A program made the translations under genes and the position numbers. The notes beneath the pieces were generated by a model, which was given only the letters and a program-made list of their open reading frames with translations, made no database searches and was not told the DNA's origin. From sequence record NC_007623.1: 64,000 nucleotides of DNA; one strand, given 5' to 3'. The first letter of the stretch is position 1. Each line of letters starts with the position of its first letter. This document shows positions 4,946 to 57,087 of this stretch, in pieces.

Positions 4946-5953
4946 TTAAGCCACGGGTGGCGAGGTGGTTCCATTGCCCGGGTCTACACCTCCGTGAATA
5001 TGGAGGTTCAGAGACACTCTCACGGTTCTCACATCGGTTTGTCCAATAACAAGACCTGTACTCACACTGTTACCGGTACGGGTGGTATTCCCGTTTTGGG
5101 TATAATTACCCTCTTGAGTATAGTTCCCTTCTTGTTCGGTATTGCCCGTATGGGTAATGTTCCCTTCCCAGTTCGTCTGACCAATGGCGATGTTCGCCAA
5201 ATTGGCTTTCATGTTAATGGTGTCGGACTGAAGGTTAAAGGTCTTCGTTAAGACATTGATTTCCTTCTCCGCATGAAAGCTAATACTGTCTTTGGTGTAA
5301 AAGGCCATCTTCTCCTTATTGACAGCAATGGTGGACCCTTCCTTGTTGGTATAGGTGAACTGATGTTTGTAATCATCGAAACTGAAGATACTCCCATCAG
5401 TTCCTCGAATATCGATGCGGCCTTCTTTGGCATTGACTTGGATATCAAAGCCCGACCGTTCCCCATTGGACTGAGAGGTCCGTAGTCCCACTAACCCGTC
5501 GTGGGTACTGACCCTGGCTGTATAGAAGTTATCCGGGTTAAAGGCCACGTCCTGAGCCAATCCAGGGTTAGCCCCCCAGCCCCACAAAACCGTCTCTAAG
5601 CGGAAACGATCCGTATTGTCCCCAAAGATGTCCCAGTAATACTGGTTCTGACCTGTGATTTGAAACACCCACACCTTAGCCCCTTCCCGGACATCCGGTG
5701 AGGTAAGTCGGTTCCCATTCCCAATGGATCGCCAGACCGCTGGTACGGTGTTTGACACCAGGGTTTTACTGGTAATCATCTCCCCTTCTTTATTCTGGCT
5801 GGTTTCTTCCTTCTGTTCTGTTTTAGCCAGGGTTCTCCCATCGGCGGTAGGAGAATGCAATGGAAGGTGGATCATTGCTTCGTGGGTATTGGTGTCCTTC
5901 GTGGCGGCAACCGTCCCTACACCCAACCATTTAACCACGTTCACTAAACTCAT
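4946..5953 (-). CDS. Baseplate central spike (gpV/gp5-like)
   Basis: N-terminal OB-fold-like region (P..G..VWV..); C-terminal 6-residue beta-helix repeats EGNYTQ-EGNYTQ-NGNTTR; terminal HIHGGV (HxH metal-binding tip). Confidence 0.75.
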   Translation of the reverse strand: MSLVNVVKWLGVGTVAATKDTNTHEAMIHLPLHSPTADGRTLAKTEQKEETSQNKEGEMITSKTLVSNTVPAVWRSIGNGNRLTSPDVREGAKVWVFQITGQNQYYWDIFGDNTDRFRLETVLWGWGANPGLAQDVAFNPDNFYTARVSTHDGLVGLRTSQSNGERSGFDIQVNAKEGRIDIRGTDGSIFSFDDYKHQFTYTNKEGSTIAVNKEKMAFYTKDSISFHAEKEINVLTKTFNLQSDTINMKANLANIAIGQTNWEGNITHTGNTEQEGNYTQEGNYTQNGNTTRTGNSVSTGLVIGQTDVRTVRVSLNLHIHGGVDPGNGTTSPPVA

Positions 5954-6003: not shown

Positions 6004-8472
6004 ATGTTTATATTAACTAAATTGATCCTAGAGAATTACATTCCTCTGTTAAGCAGCGGAATCAAACGGGTAGAATTGGATCTGAATCATTTGGTTAACC
6101 TGTTGATCGCTCAGAACGGTGTCGGGAAAACCAGTATCCTCCGAGAAGCCAATCCCCTGGCTCCTGAAAATGCCAACTACCGCGGTATTGGACGTAAGTA
6201 CGTGGAGATTAAACGGGGATTGGACCATTTCGTTTTGGATTCTAAAACAGACTTAGGCAATGGTCACAGTTTCAAGTTTAACGGGAAAGAGTTAAACAAG
6301 AATGGAACCTTTACGGAACAGAAGGACTTGGTATGGATCCATTTCCGGTTAGACAGTACTATCAGCCGTATTCTGTCCGGGCTTAAACCCAACAGTCTGT
6401 TTTCAGCGATGCCAGTGGCTCAACGTAAAGACTTCTTTATGTTCATCTACCCGAATGACACGAGTTACGCCTTAGGGGTCTTTAACAAGCTTAAGACAGA
6501 ACGTCGTGAACTGGCGGCTGCAATTAAGAACCAAGTCATGCGGTATACGGAAGAGAGTGCTAAACTCAAGCAGATCACCGAATGTGGTCCGGAAGAGCTG
6601 GAACGTCGAGTTAAGACGATTGAGACTGAACTGAGGGAGTCCTTGTTGGTACGAGGGGGTTTGGAGCAGGTGAAAGTAGACCCTGAGCTCCAAAGTAAGA
6701 TTGATACCTTCAAACGTCTGGCTGAGCAGATGACATTGAACCGAGTCAGCGGGTTCTTTGAGACTGAGGCTGAACTCAGACAGGGAATCGAAACAGTTCA
6801 AGCTATCTTGAGTGTTCACGAAGGCCAAGCCACTGCCATTCAAATGGTTATCAGTGAGCACGTAGGGGTTTTGGAAGGAATGGAGGAGATCAAAGAAGAT
6901 CCCTTTGTCTTCCATCATCAAGCGGAACAACTCAAGGTGGAACTCACTGCTCTCCGGGAAGAATACAAACAACATGGGGTGCTATTGGGTAATTACCCTT
7001 TGTTCAACGATGACGCCTATGACTTTACCGGTTTGGAATTGGTGTACGAGGCCTTGGTGGCTCAATTGCGTCGGGTGGTGAATGCCAGTACTCCTGAGTT
7101 AACCGGAGGGCGGTATAAAGAGTATACCGTCAAACTGGAGCAAACCCGTAATCAACTGAGGGCCTCTAAGAATGAGCTGGACACTCTCACCCACCAGTTG
7201 AAACATTATGATGCCATGGAGCTGGTGACTTGTCCGGAATGTACCCATGAATTCAAGGTCGGGATTACCGCGAATGAACTGCGTGCAGCACGGGTTAAAG
7301 CGGAAGCCCTTAAGTTGAGTGTGACTAAACTGGAGCAGGATGTTGAAACCCTGGAAAGATTAGTCGAACAGGACAGTGAGTGGTACCACAGCATGTTAGC
7401 CCTACATCAGTTCTGCCGGATGAATGGTGATGTTAAGTGCCTTCCTGAACTGATTAAAGCATACGACATGGGTAAGTCGGATACCAACATCCTTTTAAAC
7501 GCCCTCAGGGCCTTCATGGGGCGTTTTAACTGTAAGAGACGTATCGATGCCCTACTGGAAGAAGAAAAGCTCTTAAACACGCGTATAGGGCTGTTACAGA
7601 AGGATTCGGTATTAGACATCGCTACCTACTTAAAGAGTCTGGAACACGACCTGGAAGTGGAGAACAGTCGTATTGGTTTCTACCGTCGGCGTGTTGAACA
7701 GCTTATAAGGAACCTAAAGACCATCCACACCTACACCCGAGACCTGGAGACCCTCCGCTGTCTTAAAGACGAGATCTTCAAAGGGTTGGAACAGCAAGGG
7801 TTGGTGGAACTGCGTAAACGGGTTGATGAACGGATTCATTTGCTAACGGATGAGAAGGATGAATACCTCGCCTCCATTATCAAAAGCCGTTCGTTGAGTG
7901 CGGTTGTCGCGTCTATTTCGGAAGACATTGATCGTTTAAAACGCCGTCTGAAGATTGTGGATGGGTTAATGAACGGTCTGTGTCCGAATAAGGGGTTGAT
8001 CGGTAAGCTGATGACGGATTTCATCAAGACCTATTGTGCCAATATGAATGCGGTGATTCAATCAGTGTGGAACACCACCCTGTTTGTTAAACCCTGCCAT
8101 AAGGACAACGGGGATTTGAACTGGAAGTTCCCGGTGGTTACCGGTGATGATGAGCCCACGCCAGATGTCAGTGATTGCAGTTTGGGTGAAGCAGGTATCA
8201 TTGACTTTGCGTTCCGTTATGTGGCCATTCGTTACCACGGTAACTTCCCTCTGATGCTGGATGAGGTGGGTACCACCTTCGATGAAATCAAACGCGGTCG
8301 TTTCTTCAATTTCATTCACGAGTTAACCACCCAGAAGGACGCTAAACAACTCTTCATGATTAGCCATTACATTACTCAATACGGAATGTTCACCAACCCG
8401 AATGTAATTGCGATGTGTTATGAAGGGTTGAGTTTACCGGGTGAAGTCAATCAACACAGTGTTATCAATTAA
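6004..8472 (+). CDS. sbcC: SbcC/Rad50-like SMC ATPase
   Basis: Walker A AQNGVGKTS, long coiled coils, central CPEC zinc hook, signature-like CSLGE, Walker B LMLDE. Confidence 0.9.
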   Translation: MFILTKLILENYIPLLSSGIKRVELDLNHLVNLLIAQNGVGKTSILREANPLAPENANYRGIGRKYVEIKRGLDHFVLDSKTDLGNGHSFKFNGKELNKNGTFTEQKDLVWIHFRLDSTISRILSGLKPNSLFSAMPVAQRKDFFMFIYPNDTSYALGVFNKLKTERRELAAAIKNQVMRYTEESAKLKQITECGPEELERRVKTIETELRESLLVRGGLEQVKVDPELQSKIDTFKRLAEQMTLNRVSGFFETEAELRQGIETVQAILSVHEGQATAIQMVISEHVGVLEGMEEIKEDPFVFHHQAEQLKVELTALREEYKQHGVLLGNYPLFNDDAYDFTGLELVYEALVAQLRRVVNASTPELTGGRYKEYTVKLEQTRNQLRASKNELDTLTHQLKHYDAMELVTCPECTHEFKVGITANELRAARVKAEALKLSVTKLEQDVETLERLVEQDSEWYHSMLALHQFCRMNGDVKCLPELIKAYDMGKSDTNILLNALRAFMGRFNCKRRIDALLEEEKLLNTRIGLLQKDSVLDIATYLKSLEHDLEVENSRIGFYRRRVEQLIRNLKTIHTYTRDLETLRCLKDEIFKGLEQQGLVELRKRVDERIHLLTDEKDEYLASIIKSRSLSAVVASISEDIDRLKRRLKIVDGLMNGLCPNKGLIGKLMTDFIKTYCANMNAVIQSVWNTTLFVKPCHKDNGDLNWKFPVVTGDDEPTPDVSDCSLGEAGIIDFAFRYVAIRYHGNFPLMLDEVGTTFDEIKRGRFFNFIHELTTQKDAKQLFMISHYITQYGMFTNPNVIAMCYEGLSLPGEVNQHSVIN

Positions 8473-8476
8473 TTTT

Positions 8477-8496
8477 AAACCTACATTATTCATTTG
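8477..8496 (+). promoter_or_regulatory. Putative early promoter
   Basis: AAACCTACATTAT-tcatt-TG; one of 10 intergenic copies; resembles the phiKZ early TATATTAC motif. Confidence 0.7.
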
Positions 8497-8511
8497 CAAG
8501 GAATACCTCTA

Positions 8512-8805
8512 ATGAACGTTCAACTCCCACGATCGGTTACCCTGGATGCCTATCTTCAACCGGACGGTACACTTATGCTGGGGCCGGGTCAGGCTAAAGT
8601 AACCATTAACTACCATTCGGATCCTCAAGAATCCATTAATGCGTGCATTGTCTTTGGAGGGGCAATGCAAGCGATTGTGACTTTTGATGAAACCGGTCAG
8701 ACCCCTGTGAGTTATACGCTGTTGAATCCAGGGGGTGATTACACCGTTGAGCAGTCGGTTCTTAACATCTTGTCCTATTTCGGAGTCAGTGCTCCGATGA
8801 ACTAG
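8512..8805 (+). CDS. Hypothetical protein (97 aa)
   Basis: AAGGA RBS before ATG 8512; first gene after the promoter motif. Confidence 0.65.
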   Translation: MNVQLPRSVTLDAYLQPDGTLMLGPGQAKVTINYHSDPQESINACIVFGGAMQAIVTFDETGQTPVSYTLLNPGGDYTVEQSVLNILSYFGVSAPMN

Positions 8806-8817
8806 GAGTCATGAGTC

Positions 8818-9258
8818 ATGAACAAAGCTGAAGTGATAGAACGGTACCGCGAACTGGTCGAAGACCTCACCCTCCCGCCGCATCAGGTGATCCTGTCGGC
8901 GGGTGCCGCCTTGGTGGTAATGGGCATCCGAGAGGAAACAAGTGACCTCGATGTGGATGTCCCTACCAGCGTGTTCAACTGGGCGAGTAATAAGTTCGGG
9001 GTTATCGAGAACGAAACCGTGAATAAACGGGTTCAATACACCCCCCTGGTCGATCTCCATGAATACGACGAGAACACGGGAGTGGTGTGTATTGAGGGGG
9101 TGTGGTTGTACAGCCCTACGGAGTTACTGAAACAGAAACACTGGCTCACGAAGCTGGCTGATCGAACGGACGTTAAGACCCAACAGGATCACCGTGATAT
9201 CCGCCAACTGGAAATTCTCACTCAGTCTCAACCATTCACTGCACGCGCATTGTTGTAA
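8818..9258 (+). CDS. Minimal nucleotidyltransferase, AbiEii/DUF6036-like
   Basis: ILSAGAAL..MGIREETSDLDVDV (G..R.T.DxD) plus C-terminal LLKQK..R..QD.RDI..L. Confidence 0.7.
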   Translation: MNKAEVIERYRELVEDLTLPPHQVILSAGAALVVMGIREETSDLDVDVPTSVFNWASNKFGVIENETVNKRVQYTPLVDLHEYDENTGVVCIEGVWLYSPTELLKQKHWLTKLADRTDVKTQQDHRDIRQLEILTQSQPFTARALL

Positions 9259-9272
9259 GGTTAGGTTACGGT

Positions 9273-9767
9273 ATGTTTTACAGTCAATTGGAAGTGGTAG
9301 AAGCCGTTCAACGGTTCTCTGAGGCTCATAACACCCCATTGGATAAGATCGCTATTGGCGGAGGTGGGGCTATCATGCTCATGGGGGGTCGTGAAACCAC
9401 CTATGATTTGAACATTTGGGTGGAGAGTCCGTTCTTTGAACGCATTGCTGAAACCCAGAACGCTCTCCTCAGTCCTATGAGAGACAATGTGTTCCACATT
9501 GAAACGGTTATTGATTCCATGGATCAAACCGATCACGTCACCACACGTCGCCATTACTGGGTGCGTAAACGTAACCTCTATTTCCCCACTGTTCCTGTTA
9601 AGCTGGATCAATGTCCTGAAGTCTACATCTTCGATGCGATGTCACTGTTGATTCAGAAACGAGGGAGCTACAGTCGCCCTGAACGAGGACTCCGTCGTAA
9701 ACAGGATTACAGCGACATCTGTTTCTTGAATGCGTTGCTAAAGGAAGAACACAAAGTCAGGGCTTAA
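9273..9767 (+). CDS. Second AbiEii/DUF6036-like nucleotidyltransferase paralogue (DxD changed to DxN)
   Basis: IAIGGGGAI.LMGGRETTYDLNIWV plus LLIQK..R..QDYSDI..L. Confidence 0.65.
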   Translation: MFYSQLEVVEAVQRFSEAHNTPLDKIAIGGGGAIMLMGGRETTYDLNIWVESPFFERIAETQNALLSPMRDNVFHIETVIDSMDQTDHVTTRRHYWVRKRNLYFPTVPVKLDQCPEVYIFDAMSLLIQKRGSYSRPERGLRRKQDYSDICFLNALLKEEHKVRA

Positions 9768-9777
9768 CCTTAGGACA

Positions 9778-9803
9778 GTACCAGGGGATCACTCCCCTGG
9801 TAC
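9778..9803 (+). terminator. Intergenic hairpin without U-tract
   Basis: GTACCAGGGGA-tcac-TCCCCTGGTAC. Confidence 0.5.
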
Positions 9804-9835
9804 GTCTTCCTCCTTATACGGTTTAGGAGATTACA

Positions 9836-11806
9836 ATGGGTAAACACTCACCTGTTGAACGGATTAAATACCTCCATGAACAACTGACGTATCACGCCCA
9901 TCTCTATTTCGTCGAGAACCGGAACGAGATCTCTGATGAAGCGTATGATGTGTTGGAGCAAGAACTCAATGAGTTGTACGACCGATACCCTGAAATAGCG
10001 GCTAAGTTCGATTTCTATAATCGTCCCGTTCCTATTCATGAACCCTCCGGGGAAACCATTCAACCCGTACGGTTCGAGGAACCCATGCTCAGCTTGAAGA
10101 AAGCCTTGAGTGTGGAGGAGGCGGATACATTCCTGTTAAAGTTCCCGGATGGTACAAACTTCTTTTACGAAGAGAAACTGGATGGGTTGGCCCTGGAGTT
10201 GGTGTATGAACAGGGACAACTGGTCAGTATGAGTACCCGGGGGTCTGGATTAGTCGGGGAAGATGTGACGCATTCCATAGTTCTCTTCGATGAAGCTACA
10301 CTTCCTCGTACCTTAAGGACACTCCCTGACCGCCATAAACCCCAGGGGGATCGATTGGTTATTCGGGGTGAAGGGTACATCAGTCTGGAACGCTTCGATT
10401 CTCTTAATGAAACAGGGGGTAAACGGTCCAATCCCCGTAATGCCGTGAGTGGGTGGGTGCGGTCCCTCCCTCAGAACCAACGGGAGGATATCCGAGGAAC
10501 GCTGTACTTCGCGGCGTATTACGCCAGTGATCGATTGGGGACGAAAGCCTATTCCGAATTGAGGCAGGTTCTCTTAGGCCTAGGGTTTGGTGTTCCTGAA
10601 TCCAGGGATTGGATTGCGGTCTCAGAGAACCGGAGGGGGAACATTCGTCCGGTGGATGGGATTGTGATTAAAGTCGACAAGTTCAAGGAACAAGACGCCA
10701 GTGGAAATGGGAGTAAATTCCCTCACTGGGCGATTGCTTACAAGTTCCCTGCGGAAGAAGCGTTGGCCCAGGTTGAGGGCTGTATCTGGAATACCTCTCG
10801 GTTTGGTCGGGTAGTACCGGTGGTCCAGTATACCCCTGTAACGATCCAAGGGGTTATCTGTCAGTCTGCGTCGTTAGATAACTACGGTTCGTTTATGGAC
10901 TTAGGGTTATCAATCGGGGATCGGATTGTTATTACCCGGAACAACGATGTGATCCCTCGGTTGAACCGGGTGGAGGAGTGTGGGGAAGGAGACCTCCTAG
11001 AAGCGCCTACAAGCTGCCCTAGCTGCGATTCTCTCCTAGAGGTAGTGGTGGGTAGGGACAGTTCCGAACTCGTCTGTAATAACGTCGCAGAGTGCCCTGC
11101 GCAGATCGTTATGCGGTGCGTAACGACGTTCGATAAGTTTGGACTGGATGTAGACGGTTTAGGACCCGTTAAGGTCAGTGAATTGGTTGAGAAAGGATGG
11201 GTTAAGCAACCAGCTGATATACTTACCCTTCCGGAAGGCATTAAGGATCAATGCCTCACCCCGACGACTCGAAGAGGTTTGGAGCGTGTCCTTCAGGAAC
11301 CCGTTCCTTTACATCGCTTCTTAAAGGCGTTGGGTATCCCGGATATTGGGATCACTTTGGCTAAACGCCTAGCCAACGCCATCCCTGAAGGGAAGATCGA
11401 AGAATCCCTTACCAATCCTAAGTTCCTACAAAGTGTACGAGGGGTTTCAGTGGGGATTGCTTACCGGGTCGTGAACGCGTTCGACTCCCCGGTCTTTAAG
11501 GACAACTTCCACGCCCTAAAAGGTTTGTTAACTCTCCAGTACACCGGAACGCAGGACGACTGCATTAAAGTCTGTATTACCGGCAACATTGGACCTTCCC
11601 GAGGAGAACTCTGTAACCTGTTCGCTAAGGAAGGGATTGAACTCAGTGATCGGCTTACCCAGGACTGTGCCTTCGTCATTGTGGGTGATCGTCCTGGTAA
11701 ATCGAAACTGTTAATTGCAACCGAATCGGGTATACCTATGCTAATTGCAAAGGATTATTCGAGCATTGGCTCCCTCATTCAGTTCATTAAAGGACACCGA
11801 GAATGA
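9836..11806 (+). CDS. ligA: NAD+-dependent DNA ligase
   Basis: N-terminal Ia domain (Y..ISDEAYD.L..EL), KLDG adenylation motif, STRGSG..GEDVT, IRGE, RN..G, VDGIVIK, Zn finger CPSC..C..C, HhH repeats, C-terminal BRCT. Confidence 0.95.
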   Translation: MGKHSPVERIKYLHEQLTYHAHLYFVENRNEISDEAYDVLEQELNELYDRYPEIAAKFDFYNRPVPIHEPSGETIQPVRFEEPMLSLKKALSVEEADTFLLKFPDGTNFFYEEKLDGLALELVYEQGQLVSMSTRGSGLVGEDVTHSIVLFDEATLPRTLRTLPDRHKPQGDRLVIRGEGYISLERFDSLNETGGKRSNPRNAVSGWVRSLPQNQREDIRGTLYFAAYYASDRLGTKAYSELRQVLLGLGFGVPESRDWIAVSENRRGNIRPVDGIVIKVDKFKEQDASGNGSKFPHWAIAYKFPAEEALAQVEGCIWNTSRFGRVVPVVQYTPVTIQGVICQSASLDNYGSFMDLGLSIGDRIVITRNNDVIPRLNRVEECGEGDLLEAPTSCPSCDSLLEVVVGRDSSELVCNNVAECPAQIVMRCVTTFDKFGLDVDGLGPVKVSELVEKGWVKQPADILTLPEGIKDQCLTPTTRRGLERVLQEPVPLHRFLKALGIPDIGITLAKRLANAIPEGKIEESLTNPKFLQSVRGVSVGIAYRVVNAFDSPVFKDNFHALKGLLTLQYTGTQDDCIKVCITGNIGPSRGELCNLFAKEGIELSDRLTQDCAFVIVGDRPGKSKLLIATESGIPMLIAKDYSSIGSLIQFIKGHRE

Positions 11807-15196: not shown

Positions 15197-15622
15197 ATGA
15201 ATAATTACGGGTATGTGGATGTGTCCTTGGTAGGACCTGAAGTAGAGGAAATCTTTGGCTTGCTCTTGGAGTGTGGTATTGCACCGGCTGCGGAGTATAA
15301 CCTGCATTGTACCCTGATGTACGATGAACAGGCAGAAGAACCGCTGGTGAAACTGAATCCTGATGCGAAATTCACCGCCTACGTGACAGGGATTGATGTA
15401 CTGGGAGATGGATTGGTGTTTAACCTTACCAGCAAAGACCTCGCTGATGAACACCGCAGGTTGAAAGACGGTGGATATACCCATTCCTTTGATGCCTTCT
15501 TACCGCACATGTCTGTCACCTATGACTTCGATGAATACGACATGTTGAAAGTGAAGCAAGCTTTCGCAACCTGGGGTGGTCGACAACTCACCTTCAGTAA
15601 AGAATCGTTCGGAACCAAATAA
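15197..15622 (+). CDS. 2H phosphoesterase, Acb1 (T4 gp57B)-like anti-CBASS nuclease candidate
   Basis: Two HxT/S motifs (LHCTLMY, PHMSVTY); LVFNLTS..L..EH..L...G.THSFD.F.PH.S.TY parallels Acb1. Confidence 0.75.
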   Translation: MNNYGYVDVSLVGPEVEEIFGLLLECGIAPAAEYNLHCTLMYDEQAEEPLVKLNPDAKFTAYVTGIDVLGDGLVFNLTSKDLADEHRRLKDGGYTHSFDAFLPHMSVTYDFDEYDMLKVKQAFATWGGRQLTFSKESFGTK

Positions 15623-17108: not shown

Positions 17109-17128
17109 ACACCTACATCATTCTTGTG
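17109..17128 (+). promoter_or_regulatory. Putative early promoter
   Basis: ACACCTACATCAT-tcttg-TG. Confidence 0.6.
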
Positions 17129-18917: not shown

Positions 18918-18937
18918 AAACCTACATTATTCATATG
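18918..18937 (+). promoter_or_regulatory. Putative early promoter
   Basis: AAACCTACATTAT-tcata-TG. Confidence 0.7.
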
Positions 18938-25101: not shown

Positions 25102-25125
25102 AAACCTATATTACTCAGGTGTAAT
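25102..25125 (+). promoter_or_regulatory. Putative early promoter of the chaperonin gene
   Basis: AAACCTATATTAC-tcagg-TG; ATTAC-N6-GTAAT inverted repeat spans the predicted start site. Confidence 0.7.
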
Positions 25126-57067: not shown

Positions 57068-57087
57068 AGACCTACATTATTCGTTTG
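57068..57087 (+). promoter_or_regulatory. Putative early promoter
   Basis: AGACCTACATTAT-tcgtt-TG. Confidence 0.65.

What the first reader, a model, noticed from the sequence alone, without database searches (positions are those of the whole stretch)
8477..9767. Early operon with a tandem pair of AbiEii/MenT-like nucleotidyltransferases, one catalytically degenerate
Seen: after an early promoter come a 97-aa ORF and two paralogues sharing G[A/G]A...MG.RE.T.DL[D/N] and LL.QK......R....QD..DI..L. Established: these are hallmarks of the AbiEii/DUF6036 type-IV toxin fold, whose members (AbiEii, MenT) add nucleotides to tRNA 3' ends. The first keeps DxD (DLD); the second has DLN. No winged-helix AbiEi-type antitoxin is adjacent. 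Inference: a lytic jumbo phage may use an enzyme plus pseudo-enzyme (or small-ORF-regulated) module to edit host tRNA ends for takeover, to repair tRNAs cut by anticodon or CCA nucleases, or as a decoy against host type-IV TA/Abi defence. I know of no described system with this layout.
Basis: partly seen in the sequence, partly recalled or inferred. Interest (0 to 1): 0.72.

Follow-up and report, generated by a model that had tools for sequence, protein, structure and literature searches.

The report
Phage EL enzyme plus dead-paralogue nucleotidyltransferase pair
Jumbo phage EL carries two adjacent genes related to bacterial MenT/AbiEii toxin enzymes, one that looks active and one that has lost its metal-binding residues; the pairing recurs in related phages, but what it acts on is unknown.

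Summary
The window is Pseudomonas phage EL, and the three ORFs are gp119 (97 aa), gp120 (146 aa) and gp121 (164 aa). They lie between an SbcC-like gene and the NAD-dependent DNA ligase gene.

- **Fold and class.** gp120 and gp121 are true paralogues (same PHROG; AlphaFold models at pLDDT 88 and 95). Their closest solved structures are MenT3/TglT, MenT1, TM1012, ANT(2'')-Ia and LnuA.
- **Motifs.** gp120 keeps all four published AbiEii/MenT motifs. gp121 has lost the metal-binding acids but keeps the C-terminal Lys/Arg/Asp motifs.
- **Database membership.** Neither protein reaches any Pfam, NCBIfam or PADLOC model. Only some relatives weakly hit DUF6036 (16 of 144) and PADLOC AbiEii models (22 of 144).
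- **Distribution.** The family has 482 cluster representatives, and every source contig I examined was a large phage contig.
- **New result on gp121.** gp121 belongs to a monophyletic clade of 16 sequences that all carry the same substitutions. It always sits directly after a gp120-like gene (10 of 12 EL-like lineages).
- **New result on gp120.** Its orthologues have lost the catalytic acids in about 5 of those 12 lineages.
- **gp119.** It occurs independently of the pair, so it is not a dedicated antitoxin.

The substrate, the tRNA-editing idea and the "early" timing remain untested. I rate this a new variant of a known kind, of moderate interest.

The parts
8477..8493 (+). Promoter-like 17-nt motif upstream of gp119. 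It overlaps the 'putative phage promoter' annotated in the EL record.
   Evidence: Five matches in the window at up to 3 mismatches, all on the + strand, against 0.12 expected by chance. Identical to the motif at a second annotated EL promoter. Its temporal class is not known.
8512..8805 (+). gp119, a 97-aa protein of unknown function (phrog_16812).
   Evidence: ORF and annotation. PHROG hit at 2.6e-7, no Pfam or PDB match. pN/pS 0-0.06 within Elvirus. Homologues sit after SbcC in all EL-like loci with enough upstream sequence, and also in RisingSun and N1M2, where no NTase family member is found.
8818..9258 (+). gp120, a 146-aa minimal nucleotidyltransferase of the MenT/AbiEii/DUF6036 class with a complete catalytic motif set.
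   Evidence: AF2 pLDDT 87.9. Foldseek PDB hits include 5uvd, TM1012, MenT1, ANT(2'')-Ia, LnuA and MenT3. Key residues G29, R38, T41, D43, D45, D47, D79, K107, R116, D124 and D127 are conserved in the family. pN/pS 0.09-0.30.
9273..9767 (+). gp121, a 164-aa paralogue of gp120 that lacks the metal-binding acids (Asp-Asn-Trp in place of Asp-Asp-Asp). It belongs to a conserved pseudo-NTase clade.
   Evidence: AF2 pLDDT 94.9. Best Foldseek PDB hit is MenT3/TglT at E = 5.6e-5. The 16-member clade is monophyletic in an NJ tree, and all members have the same substitutions while keeping the Lys/Arg/Asp motifs. pN/pS 0.10-0.27.
9778..9803 (+). Perfect 11-bp stem with a 4-nt loop, 11 nt after the gp121 stop codon. 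Candidate transcript end or processing site before the ligase gene.
   Evidence: MFE of 9765-9825 is -26.2 kcal/mol, z = -3.7, and 0 of 200 shuffles fold as well. It was not called by the simple terminator scan because the U-tract is weak.

Best explanation
gp120 and gp121 form an enzyme plus pseudo-enzyme pair from a nucleotidyltransferase family found so far on jumbo-phage contigs. The family is a remote, miniaturised relative of the AbiEii/MenT (DUF1814) and DUF6036 toxin-type enzymes.

Shown here:
- Both proteins have the Pol-beta-type NTase fold.
- gp120 keeps the glycine loop, the Arg-x4-Asp-x-Asp metal site with a Thr two residues before the first Asp, the Lys...Arg motif and the Asp-x-x-Asp motif.
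- gp121 keeps everything except the second and third acidic residues, and the acidic and His residues of the next strand. These are replaced by Asn, Trp, Trp and Arg.
- That exact state is fixed in all 16 members of its clade.
- The gp121-like gene always lies immediately downstream of a gp120-like gene.
- All three genes of the unit are under purifying selection.

Inferred:
- The three genes are co-transcribed from the 8477 motif to the 9778-9803 hairpin.
- gp120 binds Mg-NTP and transfers a nucleotide to a hydroxyl acceptor. By analogy with MenT1/3/4, the only members of the class with a known substrate, this is most likely an RNA 3' end.
- gp121 cannot catalyse metal-dependent transfer. It acts as a nucleotide- or substrate-binding partner or regulator of gp120, probably within a hetero-oligomer.
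- gp119 is a neighbour by synteny, not a dedicated antitoxin.

My rough confidence by step: fold and class 0.9; gp121 catalytically inactive 0.8; physical or functional partnership 0.35; RNA or tRNA 3' end as the target 0.3.
For: - **Paralogy:**
- **Fold:** gp120 model (pLDDT 88) matches 5uvd, TM1012, MenT1, ANT(2'')-Ia, LnuA and MenT3 at E = 1e-3 to 1e-2, TM 0.5-0.58. gp121 model (pLDDT 95) matches MenT3/TglT best, at E = 5.6e-5.
- **Motif definitions:** taken from Dy 2014 (PMC3985639) and Xu 2023 (PMC10435456).
- **Column counts in 144 family members:** G29 137, R38 140, T41 122, D43 133, D45 129, D47 91, K107 127, R116 99, D124 141, D127 116.
- **Remote sequence links through relatives:** DUF6036 in 16 of 144 (best 3.8e-7); PADLOC AbiEii models in 22 and 21 of 144 (best about 1e-5).
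- **gp121-like clade:** fixed state and monophyly.
- **Tandem order:** seen in 10 of 12 EL-like lineages, with conserved SbcC - small ORF - NTase - NTase - ligase synteny.
- **Selection:** pN/pS 0-0.3.
- **Transcription unit:** promoter motif and hairpin; intergenic gaps of 12 and 14 nt.
Against: - No curated model (Pfam, NCBIfam, PADLOC) or PDB sequence search reaches gp120 or gp121 themselves.
- Structural scores are modest. Small-molecule NTases and poly(A) polymerases score similarly to MenT1 for gp120, so the fold does not fix the acceptor.
- gp120-like orthologues have lost the DxD acids in 5 of 20 clustered sequences. About 5 of 12 EL-like lineages have no copy with an intact metal site, and two of those have a single degenerate copy. 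Catalysis is therefore dispensable in part of the clade.
- No heteromer was modelled or observed.
- Some relatives are fused to GNAT and NUDIX domains. That fits metabolite or protein targets as well as RNA ends.
Confidence: 0.5

Rival explanations
1. Both proteins work mainly without catalysis, as binders or decoys. They could be a toxin-shaped pseudo-NTase that sequesters a nucleotide, an RNA end, or a host partner of AbiE/MenAT-type systems. On this view gp120's intact site is a retained ancestral feature that is not essential.
For: The gp121-like state (no metal site, but Lys/Arg/Asp motifs kept) is fixed in 16 of 16 clade members. gp120-like genes persist as full-length ORFs after losing D43/D45/D47 in L009, L013, L016, L017 and L018, and two of those lineages keep only that degenerate copy. 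The glycine loop, R38, K107, R116 and D124 are mostly retained in the degenerate copies.
Against: 15 of 20 gp120-like sequences and about 90% of the whole family keep both Asp of the DxD, which indicates selection for catalysis in most lineages. No binding partner is known. Host AbiE or MenAT presence was not examined.
Confidence: 0.17
2. gp120 is a small-molecule or metabolite nucleotidyltransferase similar to ANT(2'')-Ia or LnuA. It would modify an antibiotic-like or signalling compound rather than RNA.
For: ANT(2'')-Ia and LnuA are among the top structural matches for both models, at scores close to MenT1. Relatives in phiKZ-like contigs are fused to GNAT acetyltransferase and NUDIX domains, an arrangement typical of small-molecule modifiers. 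Single family members weakly hit Aminoglyc_resit and Lnu(AN2) models.
Against: Sequence links to the resistance families are single hits near noise, against 16-22 members hitting DUF6036 and AbiEii models. I did not check whether ANT/Lnu enzymes carry the Thr-x-Asp-x-Asp plus Lys...Arg plus Asp-x-x-Asp set described for AbiEii/MenT. gp121's best matches are MenT3 entries.
Confidence: 0.13
3. The pair is an accessory of the phage DNA replication and repair block, adding nucleotides to DNA ends or assisting the ligase or the SbcC-type nuclease.
For: Recurrent synteny. The pair lies between SbcC and the NAD ligase in all EL-like lineages. A single copy lies directly after the ligase in RSF1 and SURPRISE13, directly after SbcC in L028, and near DnaB in RP12 and FLC1-1B. 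RNase H and a DHH/DHHA1 protein follow in EL.
Against: Synteny in these phages is largely inherited gene order, and the slot between SbcC and the ligase holds different genes in RisingSun and N1M2. No DNA-binding domain is present. DNA polymerases lambda and beta appear only as low-ranking matches over part of the chain (TM 0.31-0.38).
Confidence: 0.12
4. gp120 is a protein-AMPylating minimal NTase similar to the MntA antitoxin. It would neutralise a host or phage HEPN-type RNase.
For: The size (146 aa) is close to that of minimal NTases. One family member weakly hits the MntA_antitoxin model (E = 0.023).
Against: There is no recurrent hit to MNT/NTP_transf_2-type models. No HEPN partner lies nearby. 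No MntA entry appears among the first 50 PDB matches listed for either model.
Confidence: 0.05

Closest known systems
MenT1 / MenT3 (TglT) / MenT4 nucleotidyltransferase toxins of M. tuberculosis, and AbiEii of S. agalactiae (DUF1814, PF08843)
   Same: Same Pol-beta NTase fold, and best or near-best solved matches. Same motif order: Gly loop; Arg then Asp-x-Asp, with Ser/Thr two residues before the first Asp; Lys...Arg; Asp-x-x-Asp. gp120 (146 aa) is nearer in size to MenT1 (about 190 aa) than to MenT3 or AbiEii.
   Different: No hit to PF08843 or to PADLOC AbiEii models by gp120 or gp121 themselves. The proteins are shorter. They are carried by a lytic jumbo phage rather than a cellular toxin-antitoxin locus. 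No AbiEi or MenA partner is adjacent. They occur as an active-looking plus fixed inactive paralogue pair. The motif spacings differ slightly (Arg-x4-Asp, Lys-x8-Arg).
DUF6036 (PF19502), 'Nucleotidyltransferase of unknown function'
   Same: It is the only Pfam family hit recurrently by relatives (16 of 144, best 3.8e-7), and its profile length is similar (164 positions).
   Different: gp120 and gp121 do not reach it even at E = 10. DUF6036 has no characterised member, and no paper in the searched library mentions it.
Small stand-alone NTases ANT(2'')-Ia, LnuA and TM1012
   Same: Similar size and fold, with comparable Foldseek scores.
   Different: These are small-molecule resistance enzymes or uncharacterised proteins. 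Sequence-model links are at noise level.
Enzyme plus dead-paralogue pairs (trypanosomatid AdoMetDC/prozyme; NF45-NF90 pseudo-NTase heterodimer; the two NTase-like domains of Mimivirus poly(A) polymerase, the last from my own recollection)
   Same: The concept is the same: a catalytic subunit accompanied by a conserved, catalytically dead homologue (papers listed). Mimivirus poly(A) synthase is among the structural hits.
   Different: There is no evidence yet that gp120 and gp121 associate, and no homology beyond the general NTase fold.
RlaP (RNA-ligase-associated Pol-beta NTase), described as the most prevalent RNA-repair NTase of jumbo phages (PMC7824862)
   Same: A jumbo-phage Pol-beta NTase proposed to restore RNA ends.
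   Different: No RlaP model appeared for gp120 or gp121 at E up to 10, nor among the 25 (of 27) recurrent families listed for their relatives. No RNA ligase is adjacent. EL gp126, annotated 'RNA ligase', is Acb1-like instead.

Membership tests
Pol-beta superfamily nucleotidyltransferase fold | Alpha/beta NTase core fold | tested here: met
   AF2 models with pLDDT 88 and 95. Nearly all of the best-scoring Foldseek PDB matches are NTases.
Pol-beta superfamily nucleotidyltransferase fold | hG[G/S]x9-13DhD metal-binding signature | tested here: met
   gp120 has G29-A30, then 12 residues, then D43-L-D45. Not met by gp121, which has D-L-N.
AbiEii / DUF1814 / MenT toxins | Match to the family's profile (Pfam PF08843; PADLOC AbiEii models) | tested here: not met
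   No hit for gp120 or gp121 at E up to 10. PF08843 is not among the 25 (of 27) families listed for the 144 relatives. PADLOC AbiEii models are hit weakly by 22 and 21 of 144 relatives, best about 1e-5.
AbiEii / DUF1814 / MenT toxins | Motif II with an Arg before the DhD, and Ser/Thr two residues before the first Asp (the MenT phospho-acceptor) | tested here: met
   gp120 has R38, T41, D43 and D45. Family counts are 140, 122, 133 and 129 of 144. gp121 keeps the Arg, Thr and first Asp only.
AbiEii / DUF1814 / MenT toxins | Motif III (Lys in a hydrophobic context, followed by Arg) and motif IV (acidic DxxD) | tested here: met
   K107, R116, D124 and D127 are present in both gp120 and gp121. Family counts are 127, 99, 141 and 116 of 144. 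The positive residue before motif IV is Gln in gp120. The correspondence rests on motif order, not on a residue-level superposition.
AbiEii / DUF1814 / MenT toxins | Adjacent cognate antitoxin (AbiEi/MenA3-type wHTH protein or small MenA1) | tested here: not met
   gp119 has no Pfam, PADLOC or PDB match and is distributed independently of the NTases. The flanking genes are SbcC-like and NAD ligase. Likeness of gp119 to MenA1 could not be tested.
AbiEii / DUF1814 / MenT toxins | Growth toxicity and nucleotide addition to tRNA 3' ends | not testable with these tools
   No functional data. No paper found on EL gp119-121.
DUF6036 (PF19502) | Match to the Pfam profile above the gathering score | tested here: inconclusive
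   gp120 and gp121 give no hit. 16 of 144 relatives hit, best E = 3.8e-7. One fusion protein scores 18.4 bits, below the 23.6 cut-off.
RlaP RNA-repair NTase | Match to the RlaP family profile and association with an RNA ligase | tested here: not met
   No such Pfam hit at E up to 10, and none among the 25 (of 27) families listed for relatives. No RNA ligase is adjacent.
Aminoglycoside / lincosamide nucleotidyltransferases (ANT(2'')-Ia, Lnu) | Match to family profiles (PF10706, NCBIfam Lnu models) | tested here: not met
   Only 1 of 144 relatives hits each, at E = 0.065 and 0.0045. The likeness is at fold level only.

The most novel reading that the evidence does not exclude
Jumbo phages of the EL lineage carry a toxin-derived NTase together with a co-evolved pseudo-NTase. 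The two would work as one antitoxin-less machine on RNA 3' ends (for example tRNA acceptor ends), either to take over translation or to blunt tRNA-targeting or AbiE/MenAT-type host defences. The pseudo-enzyme would be the indispensable specificity or decoy subunit. This would be a layout and a use of the AbiEii/MenT fold not described so far.
Probability: 0.18. Interest if true: 0.8.

Novelty: new variant of a known kind. Interest (0 to 1): 0.55.

Why it matters
AbiEii/MenT enzymes are known as bacterial toxins and abortive-infection effectors. Finding a large family of miniaturised relatives (482 clusters at 50% identity) on jumbo-phage contigs, without antitoxins, suggests phages have recruited this chemistry for their own use.

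The conserved active-looking plus fixed-inactive pair gives a well-defined entry point for studying pseudo-enzymes in phage biology. The pattern in which the "active" copy decays while the "dead" copy stays fixed says which subunit selection cares about most.

It also assigns a fold-level annotation to three EL genes and to phrog_12854, all previously "hypothetical".

Tried and rejected
- **Single-sequence library searches.** Pfam, NCBIfam and PADLOC gave nothing for gp120 or gp121.
- **PDB sequence searches.** Single proteins and the profiles of A1 and A2 gave only noise.
- **Word-indexed homologue search.** It found few relatives of gp121 and added little when repeated with the A2 profile. 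The exhaustive representative search was what opened up the family.
- **Literature.** No paper mentions DUF6036, and nothing was found on EL gp119-121.
- **Cellular genomes.** The first attempt failed because A2 has no conserved stretch to search with. The second, with A6, found no confirmed relative. This rests on a single peptide pattern, so it is weak negative evidence.
- **gp119 structure.** I did not resend it elsewhere, so gp119's fold and any likeness to MenA1 remain untested.
- **Residue-level superposition.** The motif correspondence therefore rests on order, spacing and the papers' definitions.
- **Rejected: gp119 as a dedicated antitoxin**.
- **Rejected: RlaP membership**.
- **Rejected: gp121 as a randomly decaying copy**.
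- **No tRNA genes** are present in the window.
Full report
**Identity and anatomy.** Window 8400-9850 is 100% identical to Pseudomonas phage EL (NC_007623) 132400-133850, and nine other Elvirus-like records match at 97-98%. The finding covers a 'putative phage promoter' annotated in the record, then gp119 (8512-8805, 97 aa), gp120 (8818-9258, 146 aa) and gp121 (9273-9767, 164 aa). The genes are separated by 12 and 14 nt. Upstream lies gp118, an 822-aa SMC/SbcC-like protein. Downstream lies gp122, the NAD-dependent DNA ligase, followed by an unknown gene, RNase H and a DHH/DHHA1 protein.

**Transcription signals.** The finding's first base, 8477, starts a 17-nt motif. It occurs 5 times in the window at up to 3 mismatches, always on the + strand, against 0.12 expected by chance. 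It is shared exactly with a second annotated EL promoter. Eleven nucleotides after the gp121 stop codon there is a perfect 11-bp hairpin at 9778-9803. The surrounding 61 nt fold at -26.2 kcal/mol, z = -3.7. The three genes therefore look like one transcription unit. Nothing available here shows that it is early.

**Paralogy.** gp120 and gp121 align directly only over their N-terminal 52 residues (31% identity, E = 2e-7). Both match phrog_12854 over their full lengths, at 8e-48 and 5e-47. The gp120 model matches the BFVD model of gp121 with TM 0.76. The quoted motif is real. gp120 has Gly29, Gly36, Arg38, Thr41, Asp43, Asp45 and Asp47. gp121 has the same Gly, Arg, Thr and first Asp, but Asn and Trp at the next two acidic positions.

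**Fold.** An AlphaFold2 model of gp120 (pLDDT 87.9) finds the following in the PDB, at E = 1e-3 to 1e-2 and TM 0.5-0.58:
- a fungal NTase-like protein (5uvd);
- Mimivirus, Megavirus and vaccinia poly(A) polymerases;
- TM1012, MenT1, ANT(2'')-Ia, LnuA, MenT3 and JHP933.

A model of gp121 built on a 75-sequence alignment (pLDDT 94.9) finds MenT3/TglT entries first (E = 5.6e-5). They are followed by 5uvd, ANT(2'')-Ia, MenT1 and TM1012. The NTase fold is therefore established. The toxin-type NTases are among the closest solved structures, though not uniquely so for gp120.

**Sequence-level class.** No curated profile (Pfam, NCBIfam, PADLOC) and no PDB sequence reaches gp120 or gp121 themselves. 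An exhaustive profile search found 482 cluster representatives at E <= 1e-3, 210 of them at E <= 1e-10. I scanned 144 of them individually:
- The only recurrent Pfam family is DUF6036 (16 members, best 3.8e-7).
- The only recurrent defence-system models are two PADLOC AbiEii models (22 and 21 members, best about 1e-5).
- NCBIfam gives no recurrent hit.

**Motifs.** Dy et al. 2014 define four motifs for AbiEii/DUF1814: hG[G/S]; an Arg-containing DhD; a Lys...Arg motif; and an acidic DxxD motif. Xu et al. 2023 give the MenT1 catalytic residues as T39, D41, D43, K137 and D152. The gp120 family shows the same series in the same order. Counts out of 144 columns are G29 137, R38 140, T41 122, D43 133, D45 129, K107 127, R116 99, D124 141 and D127 116. 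I could not make a residue-level superposition, so this correspondence rests on order and spacing. My conclusion is that this is a separate family that is a remote relative of AbiEii/MenT/DUF6036, not a member of any curated family.

**Distribution.**
- In cultured phages the family appears in EL-like phages, Ralstonia RP12, RP31, FLC and RSF1, Erwinia PhiEaH1, Burkholderia SURPRISE13, and Pseudomonas D6 and RVTF4.
- Structural matches are found in 201phi2-1, Noxifer and Phabio.
- Eleven IMG/VR loci lie on contigs of 62-311 kb.
- A pattern scan of 185,579 prokaryotic genomes found no confirmed relative. This is weak negative evidence, since it used one peptide pattern.
- Some relatives are fused to GNAT, or to GNAT plus NUDIX. 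One such fusion lies on a phiKZ-like contig.

**The tandem pair in relatives.** Sixteen sequences form a gp121-like group that is monophyletic in a neighbour-joining tree. All 16 carry Asp, Asn and Trp at the three formerly acidic positions, together with the Lys, Arg, Arg, Asp and Asp of the C-terminal motifs. In every locus examined, the gp121-like gene lies immediately after a gp120-like gene. On long contigs the order SbcC - gp119-like - NTase - NTase - NAD ligase is kept.

State of the two copies in the 12 EL-like lineages:

| Lineages | First copy (gp120-like) | Second copy (gp121-like) |
|---|---|---|
| 6, including EL | intact acidic triad | Asp-Asn-Trp |
| 1 (L035) | intact acidic triad | further degenerate |
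| 1 (L009) | first Asp lost | Asp-Asn-Trp |
| 2 (L013, L016) | thoroughly degenerate | Asp-Asn-Trp |
| 2 (L017, L018) | single copy, degenerate | none |

L016 also carries an extra truncated copy between the two. Among 20 gp120-like cluster sequences, 15 keep the DxD. Within Elvirus, pN/pS is 0-0.06 for gp119, 0.09-0.30 for gp120 and 0.10-0.27 for gp121. So gp121 is not decaying. It is a fixed, selected pseudo-NTase, whereas catalysis by the first copy is dispensable in part of the clade. Outside the EL-like clade the family is usually single-copy. PhiEaH1 has an independent second, shorter copy.

**gp119.** It matches only phrog_16812. Homologues follow SbcC in all EL-like loci with enough upstream sequence. 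They also occur in Erwinia RisingSun and Klebsiella N1M2, where no NTase family member is found. Conversely, at least 15 loci have the NTase without a gp119 homologue nearby. It is therefore a syntenic neighbour, not a dedicated antitoxin or regulator.

**Interpretation.** The best-supported reading is an enzyme plus pseudo-enzyme pair of the MenT/AbiEii class, co-transcribed.
- gp120 most likely binds Mg-NTP and transfers a nucleotide to a hydroxyl acceptor.
- An RNA 3' end is the most likely acceptor, only because that is the sole substrate established for this class.
- gp121 cannot do metal-dependent transfer. It keeps the nucleotide- or substrate-binding motifs, which fits a partner, regulator or binder.

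The rivals are:
1. mainly non-catalytic binder or decoy roles, favoured by the repeated loss of the acids;
2. a small-molecule NTase, favoured by the ANT/Lnu structural matches and the GNAT/NUDIX fusions;
3. a DNA-repair accessory, favoured by recurrent synteny with SbcC, the ligase and DnaB;
4. an MntA-like protein AMPylase, which has little support.

The RlaP family described for jumbo phages (PMC7824862) does not match.

**Verdict.** The functional proposals remain untested, and one of them, the small-ORF regulator, is unlikely. The layout is an antitoxin-less toxin-type NTase, paired with a fixed dead paralogue, seen here on jumbo-phage contigs. I found no description of it in the searched literature. 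I rate it a new variant of a known kind, of moderate interest.

Noticed in passing
window 15197-15622 (+), EL gp126: The gene annotated 'RNA ligase' matches Pfam PF23474, 'Anti-CBASS protein Acb1' (E = 3.5e-11, 43.5 bits against a cut-off of 27). It matches the 2'-5' RNA ligase family only weakly. It is probably an Acb1-like 2H phosphodiesterase, an anti-defence gene.
   Followed up: partly
window 17109-17125, 18918-18934, 25102-25118, 57068-57084 (+): Further copies of the 17-nt promoter-like motif found at 8477, all on the + strand. The copy at 18918 coincides with a second annotated EL promoter, upstream of gp132.
   Followed up: partly
L038 5001-5849; L036 51-1331: Some relatives of gp120 are fused to a GNAT acetyltransferase (P0079, P0146), and one to GNAT plus NUDIX (P0145). 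P0079 lies on a phiKZ-like phage contig next to a phiKZ internal-head-protein gene.
   Followed up: partly
L016 4307-6265; L017 and L018 around 5001-5447: The slot between SbcC and the ligase is variable in EL-like phages. One lineage has an extra truncated NTase copy and an unrelated 126-aa ORF. Two lineages keep a single NTase copy with degenerate catalytic residues.
   Followed up: yes
L004 3950-4777 (Erwinia phage PhiEaH1 gp184, gp183): A separate tandem pair: a 156-aa family member followed by a 117-aa weak family match (E about 1e-5) that lacks the C-terminal motifs. It sits downstream of SbcC and two unrelated small ORFs.
   Followed up: partly
Pseudomonas phage vB_PQ1 (PQ516283.1), region matching window 8400-9850: In this 184-kb record the region aligns in several pieces. 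The gp119 match covers only 71%, and gp121 matches in three pieces over three annotated ORFs. The genes may be interrupted or the assembly may be disturbed.
   Followed up: no
PV472050.1 (Pseudomonas phage MIZ-Pa99), record header: The taxonomy line says Pantevenvirales; Straboviridae, although the phage is 98% identical to EL (Elvirus) across this region. This looks like a mislabelled record.
   Followed up: no
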